From Diplonema japonicum (lineage: Eukaryota; Protista; Euglenozoa: Diplonemea), in assembly GCA_964019335.1 (NCBI GenBank), contig OZ025690.1, positions 62,001-126,000 on the forward strand: 64,000 nucleotides of DNA, read 5' to 3'. The notes beneath the pieces were generated by a model that did no database searches, had not been told where the DNA came from, and worked only from the letters and a program-made list of their open reading frames with translations. Positions 43,701-49,228 of the stretch are shown here, one piece after another (the first letter of the stretch is position 1; the number at the start of each line of letters is the position of its first letter). A program made the position numbers and the translations under genes.

Positions 43701-44517
43701 ATTTTCAAATTGTTTTTTCTTGTTCATGCAAAAAAAAAAAAGAAAAGAAAAAAAAGGAGAGAGAAAAAAAGGAATACGAGACCCCTTCCTTGATATCCCC
43801 ATTGTGGTTGTCTATTTATCAATCAAACACCACACTGTTAAAAAAAGTTTATGGATACCGAGGGAGGGAAAAAGAAGAAATAAAATAGCGATTTGTTACT
43901 CACTACTGTTGATGTCATGAAATCTTATGGAGTCACTGGCGCTTCCAACGCTGTAGAGTGGCAGGGTTTAGAGATTTTAAACACCACGAAATTTTGGAAC
44001 GGAATATATATGGAACAACGGTTCATTAAGCCGAATCTTTATTTCTTTTTTATTTCTGTCCCCCCCCTCCCCAATACCGTATTCAATTACTATTGACACT
44101 TCTATGTGCCAGTATAAAAATCTTTTTTTCTTTTCACCAGTATTTAAATTCACTATTTCTAAGGTCAAAGAAAAAACAATATATATAAATAACCCGTCAT
44201 ATATGGCGATAAAAAGTAAACTAATTCCCTCGTATTTACGGGGTTTTTGCAGCAACACATTTCTTTTTTTTTTGTACCCTCCCCAGCACCCTTCCAGCGA
44301 TAGAAATCATAACCATAATAAATTCGATAAAGTTTCAGTGCGCATGGGGGTGCTCACTGTTGGTTAATAAAAAAAAAAAAAAACTTCCCTCCCTCCCCTC
44401 AAAAAAAAAAAAAAAAAAACAACTAAAAAAGAATATAAGTAAAAAAAGGCGCTTTTAATGAACTAAAATTGAGAAGAAAAGCGAATAGAGGGGCGAGAAA
44501 CAGAGGAGAAAAAAAAA

Positions 44518-47500
44518 TTACGCCGCAATCGAAGTCATAAGTGTACGGTCCCACTGTGTCTGCGCCATGTAGTACTGGCCGCTGTCCATGTTGAAGACGC
44601 TGGAGTGCTCCGACACTTCGGGGGACTCAGCGTCGGACAGATCCATAGATTTTTCGCTGCGAGCTTTTTCATGCAAAAGCCGGAGCTGATCCACAACCTG
44701 GCGCATGCTGACCCTCTCCTTGTAGTCCGTGTTCCAGCATGCCTTAATGACAGTGTCGTAGATGTGATGAGCGTACGGCCTGCCTGGTGGCTTGGGCATT
44801 GTTCCACCTTTGATAATAATCTCCTTTGCGAGCTTCAAGAACGCAACCCTCTCGAACTGAACATCTGGTAGCAGCCAAAAGAAAGGACATTGTGTGGGCA
44901 CACACAACATCTCCCACAGAAGCACGCCGAAGCTCCACACATCGAAGTGGGTCGCTGCCTTTCGCTCCCCGTTTGACATCTTCAACGCTTCTGGTGATGA
45001 CCACAACACAGGCACAATAGGTGACAGCCCTCCTATAGGTGTGCAGAGCCCTAGATCGCCTAGCTTCGCATCACCCGATGTTGTTAGAAGGATATTCCTT
45101 GCTGCTAGATCCTGATGGACGACACCTTCCGTGTGCAGGAATAGTACTGCCCTGCTTATTCTCAGAGCGATGTCCAGATATTCTTCGAAGGACAGTTCTA
45201 CTTTCAGCCTTTGCGGCAGGCCGCCTGGTTGGCACAACGCGGTGACCATGAACAGTCTTCCGTCGTGCTTGCTCCACCCGTAAAATGTCAGGATGTGCTC
45301 GTACCTCAAGCTGTTCAAGTGGCACATCTCGTCCACGAAGCTCTCCAGCGTGTCGTTGCTGTAGTCGCGCAGCTCCTTCACCGCAACCTCTTCCAACACT
45401 CTGGTGTACTCGCACTTGTACACGGTTCCGAACGACCCATGGCCTAGCTCCACCCACGTATCTTTTTTGAGGTCTTCGTAGTTGATGAATTGCGATACAG
45501 GGAGGCGCGACTCTGGAGTCGATGCGTCTGTGTCGCCTGTGATGGTGCGGGAGGGGAGCTGGCTAAAGGAGCCGTCTGTCCTGCGAGTTTCAGAGGAGCT
45601 GATGGTGGTAGGCGGGATGGCATTGGGGTTGATTTGTGTCTTGTCAACGACGCCCCGCACGTAGCATGTGGAGCACACACGAAGCAGGCAACCGAACCCG
45701 TACTTCGGTAGAGGTATCCTATGTGCTGTGCAGGCGGCACAGAAGACCCCCCCGCACGCCCTGCAGTGGTGCCTTCGTGTCGTGAACGAAAACTTCGCCC
45801 CGCACAGCTTGCAGAACTCCGCAGTCGCATCGTCCTCCCACGCTGCGAGTTGCTTTCTCCTCTCCCTTCTCGACACTGTGACTTGTTCCCCTCTTTTCAG
45901 ATGTCCTGATTCCTTCTCCAGTCTTTCTTTCTCTAGCACTGCCGCATCAGGGTTCAGCTCTGTGATGCCTTTTCTATCATAAATGGCGAAAGCGAAGGCG
46001 GCAATGGACCCAAGCACTAGGTCGACCATCAGCGGCAAGAGGCCTTTGTCTGTGTCGGACATGTGGGACACGGAGTCGAGAGCGTAGCCTGCACCGATGG
46101 AAAGGACGGCAGAGCTGAAGTACTTAGTCAGAACAATCAAAGCGTTGCCAAGGATGTCGTACCCTGTAGGCAGCACCAGACCGTAGACTGTGAGTCCCGC
46201 GCTGTAGCCAAACTTCATAATGATGCCCGAGACTGACAGCACAACGATCATGGTTGTCTCGCTGCTCCACGTGCGGTGCTGTGTCAGCGAGAAAACAGTG
46301 CCAAAGGCAGCAAGGGCCAGCCCCGACTGCAACCAGACCCTGTTCGACATCTGGTCCAAACCCCTAGACAGCAGTGTTGACGCGGTGGCTGCGAAAAAAA
46401 CAGCTGCACCGTACCTGCCCGCTCCTGTCGCGCTCACCATGCCGCACCTATGCAAGATAATTGGGAAGAACGTAGCAAGCACATCCAACCCGGGCGATGT
46501 AAAGAAGAAGACACCAAGCTGCCACCAGGCCTGTACAGGGATCGCAGCACAACACGGGGTATCGTCCTTGATGCCCAGCATCTCAAGAACTTCGTCAGCG
46601 GCCTCAGGAGACCTGCGCAAATGGTCCGAGTTCGAAGCACTGTACACGTAATAGAAACAGACAGTGAAGAATGAAACGATCGACGGCAGCCACATACCGC
46701 CCCACAGGGCGTGGATGAGATCGCTTTTTTGAACGACGGAAGGAAGTCCCAAGAAAGCGGTGGCTGCGAGCGCATAAACAAGCGCGTCGACTGCAAAGAG
46801 CATGGCATTCATAACCTCAGGCTGCCTGCCCATCCACCGTGCAATCATAGCTTGGAGACACGGCTCAAGCAACGCATACCCGAAACCGGTGAAGATGCGA
46901 GAGATGTAGAACAGCCACAACCGATCGCTCAGGTGGCCTTCCTCTTGTTGCGCGCCAAGAGCGAAGAGCGCACCACCAAACGCGCAGATGACAACTGCAG
47001 CGAAGGCGACGATCTGGTCTAAAGGACGGTTCGGGGTGTTATAAGTAGCGAAGAGGTGGACGGACACATAGTACCCGACAATGCCGGAAATGTACGAAGC
47101 GGCAAGCAGAGTGCCTATGTTGCCTGCTGTAAGGCCTTCAACGATAAGGCATGGCCCGAGGCATGCTGGGAGATACATGGCAAAGGTAGGGCCGACGGTC
47201 GTTAGTGCAACGATGAAGGCTACTACCATGGCGTCCATGCGGGAGATGACACGTGGGACGGGACCTGAGTCGGCAGGAGAGCACGACCACAAGAAGTGCC
47301 GGGCTGACACACCCCTTGCTGCTGACGATTGTAAGTTCTTTCGAAGCAATAGTTCTGCCGTGCTCGGCTCTGCCATCTCCCTGCTCCACATCACAACCTC
47401 GTTCTCTATACGCCCCGTGCTCCCGTTCGATGCCGTTGTTGCTATCGGGACCACCACTGTGCTGCCCACCAACGGAGTCTGTTCCGTCTCCTTCCCGTAG

Positions 47501-47550
47501 CTTAGCTTCTTTTTAAACGGAATGTTCCGTATCACGGTTCCGTTTATCAT
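44518..47550 (-). CDS. MFS transporter-FYVE-protein kinase (TK/TKL-type) fusion, 1010 aa
   Basis: About 12 hydrophobic helices. FYVE WEDD...CKLC...RRHHCRACGGVFC..C...RVCSTC. Kinase GHGSFG, VAVK, HQDLAARN, DLG, PVLWSSPE, DVWSFGVLLWEM. One uninterrupted ORF. Confidence 0.9.
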   Translation of the reverse strand: MINGTVIRNIPFKKKLSYGKETEQTPLVGSTVVVPIATTASNGSTGRIENEVVMWSREMAEPSTAELLLRKNLQSSAARGVSARHFLWSCSPADSGPVPRVISRMDAMVVAFIVALTTVGPTFAMYLPACLGPCLIVEGLTAGNIGTLLAASYISGIVGYYVSVHLFATYNTPNRPLDQIVAFAAVVICAFGGALFALGAQQEEGHLSDRLWLFYISRIFTGFGYALLEPCLQAMIARWMGRQPEVMNAMLFAVDALVYALAATAFLGLPSVVQKSDLIHALWGGMWLPSIVSFFTVCFYYVYSASNSDHLRRSPEAADEVLEMLGIKDDTPCCAAIPVQAWWQLGVFFFTSPGLDVLATFFPIILHRCGMVSATGAGRYGAAVFFAATASTLLSRGLDQMSNRVWLQSGLALAAFGTVFSLTQHRTWSSETTMIVVLSVSGIIMKFGYSAGLTVYGLVLPTGYDILGNALIVLTKYFSSAVLSIGAGYALDSVSHMSDTDKGLLPLMVDLVLGSIAAFAFAIYDRKGITELNPDAAVLEKERLEKESGHLKRGEQVTVSRRERRKQLAAWEDDATAEFCKLCGAKFSFTTRRHHCRACGGVFCAACTAHRIPLPKYGFGCLLRVCSTCYVRGVVDKTQINPNAIPPTTISSSETRRTDGSFSQLPSRTITGDTDASTPESRLPVSQFINYEDLKKDTWVELGHGSFGTVYKCEYTRVLEEVAVKELRDYSNDTLESFVDEMCHLNSLRYEHILTFYGWSKHDGRLFMVTALCQPGGLPQRLKVELSFEEYLDIALRISRAVLFLHTEGVVHQDLAARNILLTTSGDAKLGDLGLCTPIGGLSPIVPVLWSSPEALKMSNGERKAATHFDVWSFGVLLWEMLCVPTQCPFFWLLPDVQFERVAFLKLAKEIIIKGGTMPKPPGRPYAHHIYDTVIKACWNTDYKERVSMRQVVDQLRLLHEKARSEKSMDLSDAESPEVSEHSSVFNMDSGQYYMAQTQWDRTLMTSIAA

Positions 47551-47908
47551 CTTGTCTTTCTGCAGAGCCCCCTACCGCTCCTGTTTTCTCTTTTTCTTTT
47601 TGTGCGGTTTCTTTTCTCTTTCTTTTACAGTGGCAATGATAGAAAAAAAAAAAGAACTCGTGTAGGATTGCATAAAAAAAAGAGAAAAAAAAAAAACCCA
47701 AACACTTTTCTTTCTTTTTCTTTAAAAGGGATAGGAAGAATATAAATAATGAAAAGGAAAGAGATGGGGAAAGTTAGGCTAGGATTTTCTTTTTTTTTTC
47801 TTTTGTGACCCCTCCCCCTCTCCCGTTTCATCCTTTTCTTTTGTGACCCCTCCCCCCCCTTTCCCTTTCCCCCCCCCCTCTACACTTTTTTTTTCGTTCC
47901 TTTAAATC

Positions 47909-48324
47909 TTACACGAAGTCTCGGGGCTGTTTAAAAAAAAATTGTTTTTTCTTAAGTGTCAAGGCATACTCTCACGTATTCAAACCCATTCTGGTGCATG
48001 TTCATCCTCCTGAGCTGGTCTTCGGTGTTAACAACGAAGTTCTTACCGGAGACGAGGGCTTGGCTGAAGGTTTGTTCCCTTACCTTGTCCACCCGCGAGT
48101 GGAGCACCTTCTTGTCCGAGTCTATCCTGGCTGAGATGTGCCCGTCCGCGATAAGCTGCGCAACCTGTGCCTCCAAGTCAGGCGTCGTGTACCCAAACGC
48201 CTCCGCCATCTTGTTCAAATCAATGGTGAGATAAGGACAGGTGTATTGTTTGAACCACCGTTGCGTGATGGCCTCATAGAGAGCAGGGAGGTGCGCTTGG
48301 ATGAACGGGTCATATTCGAGCTGC

Positions 48325-48357
<33 letters not shown>

Positions 48358-49228
48358 CCAATACCGTGCTTCGAGCCGAATTCAAAGCTTGAAGACCGGA
48401 CTTATAATTAGAAGCGGCCAGATCTTTAATCGCTTGGAACAGAACAGGGTTGAGGTCGAAGAAGGGTCGGAAAGCGTTGTTGCCTAACACGTTGGACTTG
48501 ATCTCTTGCCGAGTAAATGTTGCGCAGACGAGGACAGCCGCGTATGTTACTATATCGGAGCCAGGGAGGGTTTCTGCAAAATGGTCGCCGAGATCGCCGG
48601 GGATGTCTAATAGTTTTTGAGCTGCGAGTTTGTACTTTTTCGCGTCGAGATGGAGAAGAGCTTGTGCTGCACGAATTTTTCCTTTGCAGATTTTGTCTTT
48701 TGAAGCTTCGGTCTGCTCCGCCCGTGAGCAGTGCTGGTTCACGATTGTCCAGGACTGCGCTTCGATCCCTGTGGTCACAACATCGAGACACATTTCTAAA
48801 ACGTGTGCAGGAGTTGTGCAGTAGTCCCGCATTTTTGCATAGTGTTTCATTGCGCTCTGAAGCATCCCCTTCTCGTAGTAATGCCGTCCCAGCTCTTTCA
48901 ACGCTTGCCGCGAATCTTCTTTTTTCACGCCTGTCTTCGCCATTCCGAAATTGTGCTCTAGCTTCATCAGTTCTTTCGTCGCGTCTTCGGTCACCTTGGC
49001 TACCAGTTTTGTGTCCTCTGCCACGTCGTAGCCTCTTGCCTGCATTTTCGCCACCGTTTCTGTGTACATTGTCATCCTTTTAGTTTGCTTCAACTCCTCC
49101 AGTGCCATCAGGCCAGCCTGCTCCCGGTGTTCTTTCCTGCCGTTGTCAAAGATGTAGAGGAGCCTGCTTATCTTAACCCCACCTGGGGCGTACTCCTTCA
49201 TGTACTCGACTAGGTCAAATGGTGTCAT
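47909..49228 (-). CDS. CSN1: COP9 signalosome subunit 1, 3 exons, ~410 aa
   Basis: KMRDYCT, KYKLAAQKLL and ATFTRQEIKSNVLGNNAFRPFFDLNP, plus a PCI domain (QYTCPY...MAEAF...ISARIDS). Introns 48321..48364 and 47927..47969. Confidence 0.87.

What the first reader, a model, noticed from the sequence alone, without database searches (positions are those of the whole stretch)
44518..47550. MFS transporter fused to FYVE and a tyrosine-kinase-type domain: candidate endolysosomal transceptor
Seen: one 1010-aa ORF with an N-terminal [DE]xxxL[LIV]-type sorting signal (EQTPLV), a ~12-TM MFS fold, a canonical FYVE finger (WxxD, RRHHCR, RVC) and a complete kinase. The catalytic loop HQDLAARN and P+1 loop PVLWSSPE match the tyrosine-kinase consensus (HRDLAARN, PxxWxxPE), not the Ser/Thr type (HRDLKPxN). 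The tail carries a YY pair (GQYYM). Known: FYVE binds PI3P on endosomes, and trypanosomatids are described as lacking conventional tyrosine kinases. Inference: a transporter on PI3P-positive endosomes or food vacuoles that couples solute sensing to Tyr phosphorylation. I know of no described protein with this architecture. The MFS part may be MFSD1-like (weak).
Basis: partly seen in the sequence, partly recalled or inferred. Interest (0 to 1): 0.88.

Follow-up and report, generated by a model that had tools for sequence, protein, structure and literature searches.

The report
Diplonemid transporter–FYVE–tyrosine-kinase-like fusion protein
A marine diplonemid protist (not a trypanosomatid) has one gene that joins a 12-helix transporter-like membrane domain, a PI3P-binding FYVE finger and a kinase with tyrosine-kinase-type substrate motifs; the architecture is so far seen only in four diplonemids, and its function is inferred, not shown.

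Summary

Corrections:
- The organism is a diplonemid. Orthologues come from Diplonema ambulator and Flectonema neradi.
- The EQTPLV "dileucine" is not conserved.
- The MFS call is sub-threshold in Pfam for this protein. An orthologue (E 7.5e-11), protein-language-model look-alikes and helix topology support it. Both AlphaFold runs failed, so the fold is unconfirmed.
- The kinase is not a canonical tyrosine kinase. It belongs to a clade of about 9 AARN-loop kinases in this genome. They have TK-type substrate-binding motifs but keep the "STK-histidine", lack the TK I-helix Phe and mostly lack the RD arginine. In the tree the clade lies beside the TKs, not inside them. A TKL affinity is not firmly rejected (AU p 0.053).

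Full-length orthologue transcripts in two species argue against a split gene. No RNA data were found for this species. No relative of the architecture turned up outside diplonemids, and no paper describing it was found.

An endolysosomal "transceptor" with Tyr phosphorylation is plausible but untested.

The scan had separately noted a TK-like paralogue on other DNA of this genome.

The parts
44518..47550 (-). Whole ORF, 1010 aa plus stop: N-tail, MFS-like domain, FYVE, linker, kinase, C-tail
   Evidence: covered end to end by independent contigs
47242..47550 (-). N-terminal cytosolic tail, residues 1-103. EQTPLV at 23-28 is not conserved. The block at residues 61-103 (EMAEPSTAELLLRKNL...) is conserved, 53-77% identity
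45958..47241 (-). MFS-like membrane domain, residues 104-531: 6+6 long helices split by a central loop at 307-338. An MFS-typical R-x-x-T-G-x-G segment (SRIFTGFGY) lies in helix 4
   Evidence: Pfam MFS_1 27.6 bits, below cutoff; orthologue E 7.5e-11; ESM Atlas all MFS at 0.99; helices from DSSP of low-confidence models; K+R 12 inside, 5 outside; no relative outside diplonemids
45841..45957 (-). Conserved charged juxtamembrane helix, residues 532-570 (LNPD..EKE.LEKESGH invariant)
45658..45840 (-). FYVE zinc finger, residues 571-631: WEDD, RRHHCR, RVC and all Cys pairs. The most conserved module, 74-92% identity
45469..45657 (-). Ser/Thr-rich linker, residues 632-694, with conserved SRTITG and SRLP..FI blocks
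44671..45468 (-). Protein kinase domain, residues 695-960, with all catalytic residues present: GHGSFG, K725, E741, D814, N819, D832 in DLG, E854, R946
45133..45135 (-). H806, the 'STK-histidine' that canonical TKs have lost. It is retained here and in every family member
45094..45117 (-). Catalytic loop HQDLAARN, residues 812-819: TK-type AAR, no RD arginine
   Evidence: genome pattern hit at C43:107094-107117
44989..45012 (-). P+1 loop PVLWSSPE, residues 847-854: TK-type Pro and Trp. The activation segment is short (23 residues from DLG to SPE) and contains no Tyr
44569..44574 (-). Y993-Y994 pair in the C-terminal tail, invariant in all four species although the rest of the tail is poorly conserved

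Best explanation
SHOWN. This is one intact diplonemid gene. It encodes a polytopic membrane kinase with these parts in order:
- a cytosolic N-tail;
- a 12-helix (6+6) MFS-type domain;
- a conserved charged juxtamembrane helix;
- a canonical FYVE finger;
- a Ser/Thr-rich linker;
- a catalytically complete protein kinase;
- a tail with an invariant YY pair.

The kinase belongs to a clade of about 9 paralogues in this genome. The clade pairs tyrosine-kinase-type substrate-binding motifs (the AAR catalytic loop, and Pro/Trp in the P+1 loop) with a Ser/Thr/TKL-type hydrophobic core (STK-histidine kept, Met instead of the TK I-helix Phe). It usually has no RD arginine.

INFERRED. With the N- and C-termini inside, FYVE and the kinase face the cytosol. 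FYVE binds PI3P in the same membrane. The protein would therefore act on PI3P-rich endosomal, phagosomal or digestive-vacuole membranes of this phagotrophic cell. The membrane domain would report, or carry, a luminal solute, and its conformational state together with PI3P engagement would set the output of a non-RD kinase that does not depend on activation-loop phosphorylation. That kinase would phosphorylate tyrosine, possibly with dual specificity, on nearby targets and perhaps on its own YY tail. In short, a hard-wired transceptor.
For: - Single ORF with all motifs.
- Collinear full-length orthologues of 1010-1016 aa in D. ambulator, F. neradi and a third genome. Two of them come from Trinity transcripts, so they are single mRNAs.
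- All modules are conserved: FYVE 74-92%, kinase 62-71%, MFS 38-70%, juxtamembrane 46-77%.
- MFS support.
- Topology: K+R 12 inside, 5 outside.
- FYVE is closest to the PI3P-binding domains of Vps27, Hrs, LM5-1 and EEA1, E 7e-16 to 7e-13.
- The top 60 PDB hits and the best database hits are all TK group.
- PMC4771162 calls the AAR motif unique to PTKs and absent from TKLs; its Arg bonds the substrate Tyr hydroxyl.
- The family forms a clade with 99/96 support, and a 95/89 branch separates it from the sampled TKL, STE, CAMK and bacterial kinases.
- Exactly 8 strict AARN loci in the genome against 0 in the control.
- Two classical PTPs are present, so erasers exist.
Against: - No experiment and no RNA data exist for this species. 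The six public runs behave like DNA.
- Both structure predictions were unusable (pLDDT 35 and 40), so neither the MFS fold nor any substrate pocket is confirmed.
- The membrane half has no sequence relative with a known substrate.
- The kinase fails two TK core criteria. It is not nested in the TK clade. Grouping it with TKLs is not firmly rejected (AU p 0.053). Tyrosine specificity is therefore a prediction from two motifs.
- The basic residue that precedes the P+1 Trp in TKs is Leu here.
- Only one weak SH2 domain exists in the genome, so a classical pTyr reader network is lacking.
- A membrane-embedded protein does not need FYVE for recruitment, so FYVE's role is unclear.
- D. ambulator also has a 608-aa isoform that starts inside the MFS C-half.
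Confidence: 0.5

Rival explanations
1. Self-regulated transporter. The MFS domain is a working endolysosomal or phagosomal solute carrier. The attached kinase is not a downstream signaller. It tunes the carrier's own activity or trafficking, for example by phosphorylating its N-tail, central loop or YY tail, in response to PI3P.
For: The membrane domain is under clear constraint, with conserved intramembrane polar residues and MFS-typical motifs. The N-terminal block 61-103 and the YY tail are conserved. Regulating transporters by phosphorylating their tails is established biology (own knowledge, for example NRT1.1).
Against: No substrate or transport evidence exists. Nothing distinguishes this reading from the sensor model with present data. 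Eight paralogues carry the same kinase on unrelated receptor-like or scaffold domains, which suggests a signalling module.
Confidence: 0.22
2. Membrane-anchored PI3P effector kinase of Ser/Thr or dual specificity. The MFS-like domain is a degenerate anchor. The AAR/P+1 resemblance to TKs is convergent or TKL-derived and does not give tyrosine specificity.
For: The STK-histidine is retained, the I-helix has Met rather than Phe, and the clade lies outside the TKs. A TKL grouping is not rejected. The MFS half is extremely diverged, with no PDB hit at E<=10 and a sub-threshold Pfam score. The same genome has two other FYVE plus ordinary Ser/Thr kinase genes, L009 and L010. Almost no SH2 readers exist.
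Against: AAR plus P-x-x-W are the residues that contact substrate tyrosine, and PMC4771162 reports AAR as absent from TKLs. Both are invariant across the four orthologues and most paralogues. The membrane domain is conserved well beyond what an anchor needs.
Confidence: 0.2
3. Annotation artefact. Two adjacent genes, an MFS transporter and a FYVE-kinase, happen to share a frame, or are separated at the RNA level by internal trans-splicing and polyadenylation.
For: Euglenozoan genes are processed from polycistrons. A 608-aa D. ambulator isoform lacks the first ~400 residues. No RNA was available for this species.
Against: There is no stop for 1017 codons. Full-length 1010- and 1014-aa ORFs occur on single Trinity transcripts in two other species. 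The junction (residues 532-570) is among the best-conserved segments and has no low-complexity intergenic-type sequence. The short isoform starts inside a transmembrane helix rather than at a domain boundary.
Confidence: 0.04
4. A canonical holozoan or amoebozoan tyrosine kinase acquired by horizontal transfer and fused to local domains.
For: The best database and PDB hits are metazoan TKs.
Against: Identity to TKs is only 26-33%. The clade is not nested in the TKs. All members keep the STK-histidine that TKs lost, which would require a reversion. The family has about 9 diversified members with diplonemid-specific partners.
Confidence: 0.04

Closest known systems
Tyrosine kinase (TK) group of Holozoa and Amoebozoa, including receptor tyrosine kinases
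   Same: AAR catalytic loop, P-x-x-W-x-x-PE P+1 loop, CW motif in subdomain XI, membrane-embedded receptor-like layout. All the best sequence hits are TKs.
   Different: Keeps the STK-histidine. Has Met where TKs have the I-helix Phe. HQD instead of HRD. Short activation loop without Tyr. Leu instead of Lys/Arg before the P+1 Trp. A separate clade. The membrane part is a 12-helix transporter fold rather than a single-pass receptor. Almost no SH2 partners in the genome.
Tyrosine-kinase-like (TKL) group, for example RAF/MLK, proposed as STK-to-TK intermediates (PMC4771162)
   Same: The STK-histidine is retained together with TK-like features. PF07714 scores above PF00069. A TKL grouping is not firmly rejected (AU p 0.053).
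   Different: TKLs have HRDLK-type loops and, per PMC4771162, lack AAR. The ML tree separates the clade from the sampled TKLs at 95/89. TKL sampling here was thin: KSR, Raf-like and plant RLKs only.
Nutrient transceptors: yeast Snf3/Rgt2, Pho84, Gap1; plant NRT1.1; lysosomal SLC38A9 (own knowledge)
   Same: A transporter-fold protein used, or usable, as a sensor that controls kinase signalling. The idea of coupling carrier conformation to phosphorylation is the same.
   Different: In those systems the kinase is a separate, recruited protein. Here kinase and lipid-binding domain are covalently fused to the carrier. No sensing has been shown here.
Bacterial transporter-domain sensor kinases such as CbrA (SLC5-like domain fused to a histidine kinase) and UhpC/UhpB (own knowledge)
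   Same: Covalent or obligate pairing of a solute-carrier fold with a kinase output.
   Different: Those use histidine kinases of two-component systems in bacteria, not a eukaryotic protein kinase, and have no phosphoinositide-binding module.
MFSD1, the lysosomal dipeptide transporter
   Same: Several of the ESM-Atlas look-alike clusters carry this label. MFSD1 is an endolysosomal MFS with an N-terminal dileucine signal (own knowledge).
   Different: No detectable sequence homology by phmmer in 1.84 billion representatives or PDB. The dileucine-like motif is not conserved. MFSD1 has no FYVE or kinase.
FYVE-domain kinases: PIKfyve, and the FYVE plus Ser/Thr kinase genes of this same genome (L009, L010)
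   Same: A FYVE finger N-terminal to a kinase on one polypeptide.
   Different: PIKfyve is a lipid kinase (own knowledge). L009 and L010 have HRD[IV]KPEN Ser/Thr loops, no membrane domain, and fall with CAMK-like kinases in the tree.

Membership tests
Protein tyrosine kinase (TK) group | [quoted passage not shown] | tested here: met
   HQDLAARN at 812-819; HQDL/VAA/SRN in all orthologues. Criterion from PMC4771162.
Protein tyrosine kinase (TK) group | P+1 loop with Pro and Trp (P-[IV]-[KR]-W-x-A-P-E) | tested here: met
   PVLWSSPE at 847-854; Pro and Trp are invariant. The basic residue before Trp is Leu.
Protein tyrosine kinase (TK) group | Loss of the E-helix STK-histidine (replaced by Ala/Ser/Glu and similar) | tested here: not met
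   H806 is retained in the query, in all orthologues and in all 8 paralogues. All reference TKs show E/S/G/A/Q/V there.
Protein tyrosine kinase (TK) group | Conserved I-helix Phe (EphA3 F871) that compensates for the lost histidine | tested here: not met
   Met949 (R-V-S-M) is invariant in the orthologues. Reference TKs have RP-x-F.
Protein tyrosine kinase (TK) group | Falls inside the monophyletic TK clade | tested here: not met
   The diplonemid clade (99/96) lies outside the TK clade (95/88). It is adjacent to it only if the root lies among the Ser/Thr kinases.
Protein tyrosine kinase (TK) group | Phosphorylates tyrosine | not testable with these tools
   Needs an in vitro kinase assay or phosphoproteomics.
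Tyrosine-kinase-like (TKL) group | Groups with TKL families; HRDLK-type loop with the STK-histidine retained | tested here: inconclusive
   STK-histidine retained. The loop is AAR rather than K-x-x. The ML tree separates it from the sampled TKLs, but the constraint costs only 9.4 lnL, AU p 0.053. Only six TKLs were sampled.
FYVE zinc finger (PI3P-binding type) | WxxD, R(R/K)HHCR and RVC motifs plus eight zinc-binding Cys | tested here: met
   WEDD 571, RRHHCR 592, RVC 624. Pfam 66.3 bits. Vps27 FYVE E 7e-16; also Hrs, LM5-1 and EEA1.
FYVE zinc finger (PI3P-binding type) | Binds PI3P | not testable with these tools
   Needs a liposome or lipid-strip assay.
Major facilitator superfamily | Significant match to an MFS profile | tested here: inconclusive
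   MFS_1 scores 27.6 bits against a 33.4-bit cutoff, E 1.8e-6, over nearly the whole model. One orthologue reaches E 7.5e-11, and 2 of 5 members match. ESM-Atlas top clusters are all MFS at 0.99. There are no phmmer hits in PDB or among 1.84 billion representatives.
Major facilitator superfamily | 12 transmembrane helices as two six-helix halves with a central cytosolic loop, N- and C-termini inside | tested here: met
   DSSP shows helices 104-306 and 339-531 with a loop at 307-338 in both models, whose 3-D coordinates are unreliable. K+R 12 inside, 5 outside.
Major facilitator superfamily | MFS three-dimensional fold | tested here: inconclusive
   AlphaFold2 gave pLDDT 34.7 (full length) and 40.1 (membrane half) with 4-5-row alignments. 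No fold search was justified.
MFSD1 subfamily | Sequence homology to MFSD1 and a conserved N-terminal dileucine sorting motif | tested here: not met
   No sequence homologue beyond diplonemids. EQTPLV is replaced by DETELR/EETELK in two orthologues. Only language-model similarity points this way.

The most novel reading that the evidence does not exclude
Diplonemids carry a family of genuine tyrosine-phosphorylating kinases that acquired the AAR/P+1 substrate pocket on an unmodified Ser/Thr-type core. This arose either independently of the animal/amoebozoan TKs or from a very deep common ancestor. One member is the first eukaryotic protein kinase covalently hard-wired to a solute-carrier domain and a PI3P sensor, that is, a one-polypeptide endolysosomal transceptor.
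Probability: 0.28. Interest if true: 0.85.

Novelty: new variant of a known kind. Interest (0 to 1): 0.62.

Why it matters
Two questions become testable.

1. Origin of tyrosine kinases. PMC4771162 proposes that the TK hydrophobic core changed first, in a TKL-like intermediate, and that the AAR substrate pocket came later. This diplonemid clade shows the opposite combination: an AAR pocket on an STK-type core. It lies in Discoba, far from animals and Amoebozoa, where TKs have been described. If the clade phosphorylates tyrosine, it is either a convergent invention or evidence of a much older origin.

2. Nutrient sensing. Transceptors normally signal through separately recruited kinases. A natural fusion of carrier, PI3P sensor and kinase would be a compact system for studying how carrier conformation is turned into phosphorylation.

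Diplonemids are among the most abundant and diverse marine heterotrophic eukaryotes, and their signalling is almost unstudied.

Tried and rejected
1. AlphaFold2 on the full-length alignment (pLDDT 34.7) and on the membrane half (pLDDT 40.1) gave unusable models.

The source species of orthologue P0002 and its gene neighbourhood could not be examined.

3. RNA evidence. The look-up of sequencing runs returned six runs of unknown kind. When laid, their contigs had flat depth across genes and intergenic DNA, which is how genomic DNA behaves. There was no information on transcript ends or spliced leaders.

4. The membrane half alone found only diplonemid orthologues among 1.84 billion representatives and nothing in PDB at E<=10.

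5. A profile search with the orthologue alignment and a JGI metagenome scan returned only kinase-only or FYVE-only hits. The one locus with both, L027, is unrelated and has no AARN loop.

6. The ENA SH2/SH3 multi-kinase proteins P0105-P0110 were considered as possible diplonemid TKs. This was rejected: they are at most 34% identical to anything in this genome and have the canonical TK core.

7. The dileucine signal was rejected as not conserved.

8. Rfam found nothing in the window.

9. Six literature searches found no description of diplonemid TK-like kinases or of MFS-protein-kinase fusions. Absence from the held library is not proof of absence.

Full report
**1. The observation**

Window 44518-47550 (minus strand) holds one uninterrupted 1010-aa ORF. 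The open frame extends only seven codons above the ATG. Pfam results:
- PK_Tyr_Ser-Thr at residues 701-956: E 9.8e-46, 156.6 bits, above Pkinase at 122.1 bits.
- FYVE at 571-631: E 2.6e-18.
- MFS_1 at 120-473, spanning model positions 16-336 of 347: only 27.6 bits, below the 33.4-bit cutoff.

Contigs from four public runs in two of the three studies that hold this DNA cover the ORF with no differences, so it is not an assembly chimera.

**2. The organism**

The only full-length relatives among 5.8 billion clustered proteins are three sequences of 1010-1016 aa at 46-67% identity. Cluster look-up names two of them as EukProt transcripts of Flectonema neradi and Diplonema ambulator.

The genome is 62.5 Mb in 132 contigs. 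It has GT-AG micro-introns filled with poly(A).

The window therefore comes from a diplonemid, not a trypanosomatid.

**3. Is it one gene?**

- The four proteins are collinear from the conserved N-terminal block through MFS, FYVE, linker, kinase and the YY tail.
- The junction between the last membrane helix and FYVE (residues 532-570) is among the best-conserved segments, at 46-77% identity.
- The F. neradi and D. ambulator sequences are complete ORFs on single Trinity transcripts.

This argues against an internal trans-splice. The evidence is from other species only. The six public runs that hold this DNA behave like genomic DNA, with flat depth.

**4. The membrane half**

It has no detectable sequence relative outside diplonemids in 1.84 billion representatives, and none in PDB even at E<=10. 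Support for an MFS assignment comes from four sources:
- The near-full-length Pfam alignment, sub-threshold for the query but E 7.5e-11 for one orthologue.
- ESM-Atlas look-alikes that are all MFS clusters at 0.99, several labelled MFSD1-like.
- Twelve long helices arranged 6+6 around a central loop.
- A positive-inside count of 12 against 5, which places both termini, and hence FYVE and the kinase, in the cytosol.

Both AlphaFold runs failed (pLDDT 34.7 and 40.1) because only 4-5 sequences were available. The fold is unconfirmed and no fold search was run. 'MFSD1-like' remains a lead only. The EQTPLV motif becomes DETELR/EETELK in two orthologues, so it is not a conserved dileucine signal.

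**5. FYVE**

All signature motifs and cysteines are present. It is the most conserved module, at 74-92% identity. Its best solved relatives are the PI3P-binding FYVE domains of Vps27 (E 7e-16), Hrs, Leishmania LM5-1 and EEA1. PI3P binding is a strong prediction.

**6. The kinase**

All catalytic residues are present, so it should be active. The 60 best PDB matches are all tyrosine kinases (EGFR, TYK2, JAK2, CSK, TrkC, PYK2). A kinase-only search of the protein database returns only TK-group proteins after the orthologues.

I scored the criteria of PMC4771162 on an alignment:
- Met: the AAR motif, which that paper calls unique to PTKs and absent from TKLs, and the P+1 Pro/Trp.
- Not met: the 'STK-histidine' that TKs have lost is retained (H806), and the TK I-helix Phe is Met (M949).
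- In addition, HRD is HQD (non-RD), and the activation segment is short and lacks Tyr.

The protein is not alone. The genome has exactly 8 strict H-x-D-x-A-A-R-N loci against 0 for the reversed-pattern control, plus one HMDVACRN variant. All show the same mosaic. Their partner domains are:
- ankyrin repeats;
- SPRY plus a TM helix;
- a PcRGLX lyase-like ectodomain plus a TM helix;
- WD40;
- an unassigned ~6-TM domain;
- no recognisable domain.

In an LG+C20 tree of 54 kinase domains, these sequences form a clade (99/96). That clade lies outside the TK clade (95/88). A 95/89 branch separates it from the sampled TKL, STE, CAMK and bacterial kinases and from this genome's ordinary Ser/Thr kinases. 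Forcing the clade together with the TKLs costs 9.4 log-likelihood units, AU p 0.053, so a TKL origin is not firmly excluded. TKL sampling was thin.

The defensible statement is this: it is a diplonemid-specific kinase clade with a TK-type substrate pocket on an STK/TKL-type core. It is not a member of the canonical TK group.

**7. Phosphotyrosine toolkit**

Two full classical PTPs are present. Only one weak SH2 domain exists (25.9 bits). It lies on a gene whose kinase part has an HQDIKPSN Ser/Thr-type loop. There is thus no elaborate pTyr reader network.

**8. Mechanism**

Shown: the architecture, its conservation, catalytic completeness, a canonical FYVE, a cytosolic orientation by the positive-inside rule, and membership in a paralogous kinase family.

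Inferred: residence on PI3P-rich endosomal or phagosomal membranes; coupling of the carrier's state and PI3P binding to kinase output; tyrosine or dual specificity; and possible autophosphorylation of the invariant YY tail.

I rate the full transceptor model at about 0.5 as the best single account. The main rivals are a self-regulated transporter (0.22) and a membrane-anchored Ser/Thr or dual-specificity PI3P effector kinase (0.20). A split gene or a recent transfer of a canonical TK are each unlikely (about 0.04).

**9. Comparison and novelty**

TKs are described in Holozoa and Amoebozoa (PMC5804921). Six literature searches found no description of TK-like kinases in diplonemids or of an MFS-protein-kinase fusion. 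No further member turned up in a profile search or a metagenome scan.

The parts are all known kinds. The combination, and the mosaic kinase clade, appear undescribed. I file it as a new variant of a known kind, namely membrane receptor-type kinases and transceptors. It is of moderate-to-high interest, mainly for kinase evolution.

**10. Limits**

- There is no RNA for this species and no usable structure.
- The TKL reference set is thin.
- The database searches rely on shared words and length windows.
- The source of orthologue P0002 is unknown.

Noticed in passing
window 47952-49228 (-), intron about 48327-48372: The neighbouring gene is an RPN7 + PCI (proteasome lid / CSN1-like) gene split into two ORFs by a ~46-nt GT...AG micro-intron. 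The intron consists almost entirely of about 30 A's (GTATTGG-A30-CCTTGCAG).
   Followed up: partly
G000:C5 about 315600-317530 (-), loci L011 / L048: The only SH2 domain hit in the genome (25.9 bits, cutoff 21) lies N-terminal to a protein kinase whose domain is broken by small introns. The kinase has an HQDIKPSN Ser/Thr-type loop. This SH2-kinase gene in a euglenozoan recalls the Dictyostelium SH2 kinases.
   Followed up: partly
G000:C34:165610-168393 (-), locus L015 1611-4394: Paralogue with about 6 N-terminal TM helices of no known family, a ~300-aa unassigned middle region and an HMDVACRN kinase. It is a second polytopic-membrane kinase of the same clade.
   Followed up: partly
L006 (G000:C107:256164-259904), L004, L005, L013: Other AARN-clade kinases carry, respectively, a PcRGLX rhamnogalacturonan-lyase-like ectodomain plus TM, SPRY plus TM, ankyrin repeats (a Shark-like layout) and C-terminal WD40 repeats. 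The family is small but architecturally diverse and receptor-like.
   Followed up: partly
L009 (G000:C19:626000-633000) and L010 (G000:C70:85000-90500): Two further FYVE + kinase genes with ordinary HRD[IV]KPEN Ser/Thr loops and no membrane domain.
   Followed up: partly
window 44317-44435 and 47656-47809: Both flanks of the gene are low-complexity poly-T, poly-A and poly-G DNA. The stretch at 44320-44356 belongs to a very high-copy short repeat (contig depth 20-50 times that of its surroundings). A 120-nt contig in two runs joins 47656 to 44317 with 22 other letters between. This is probably a repeat or low-complexity path rather than a rearrangement, but it is unresolved.
   Followed up: no
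P0105-P0110 (ENA proteins, source unknown): Unnamed proteins with an SH2 or SH3 domain and up to four tandem canonical TK domains (HRDLAARN, STK-histidine lost). They are not from this genome's lineage (at most 34% identity to it).
   Followed up: partly
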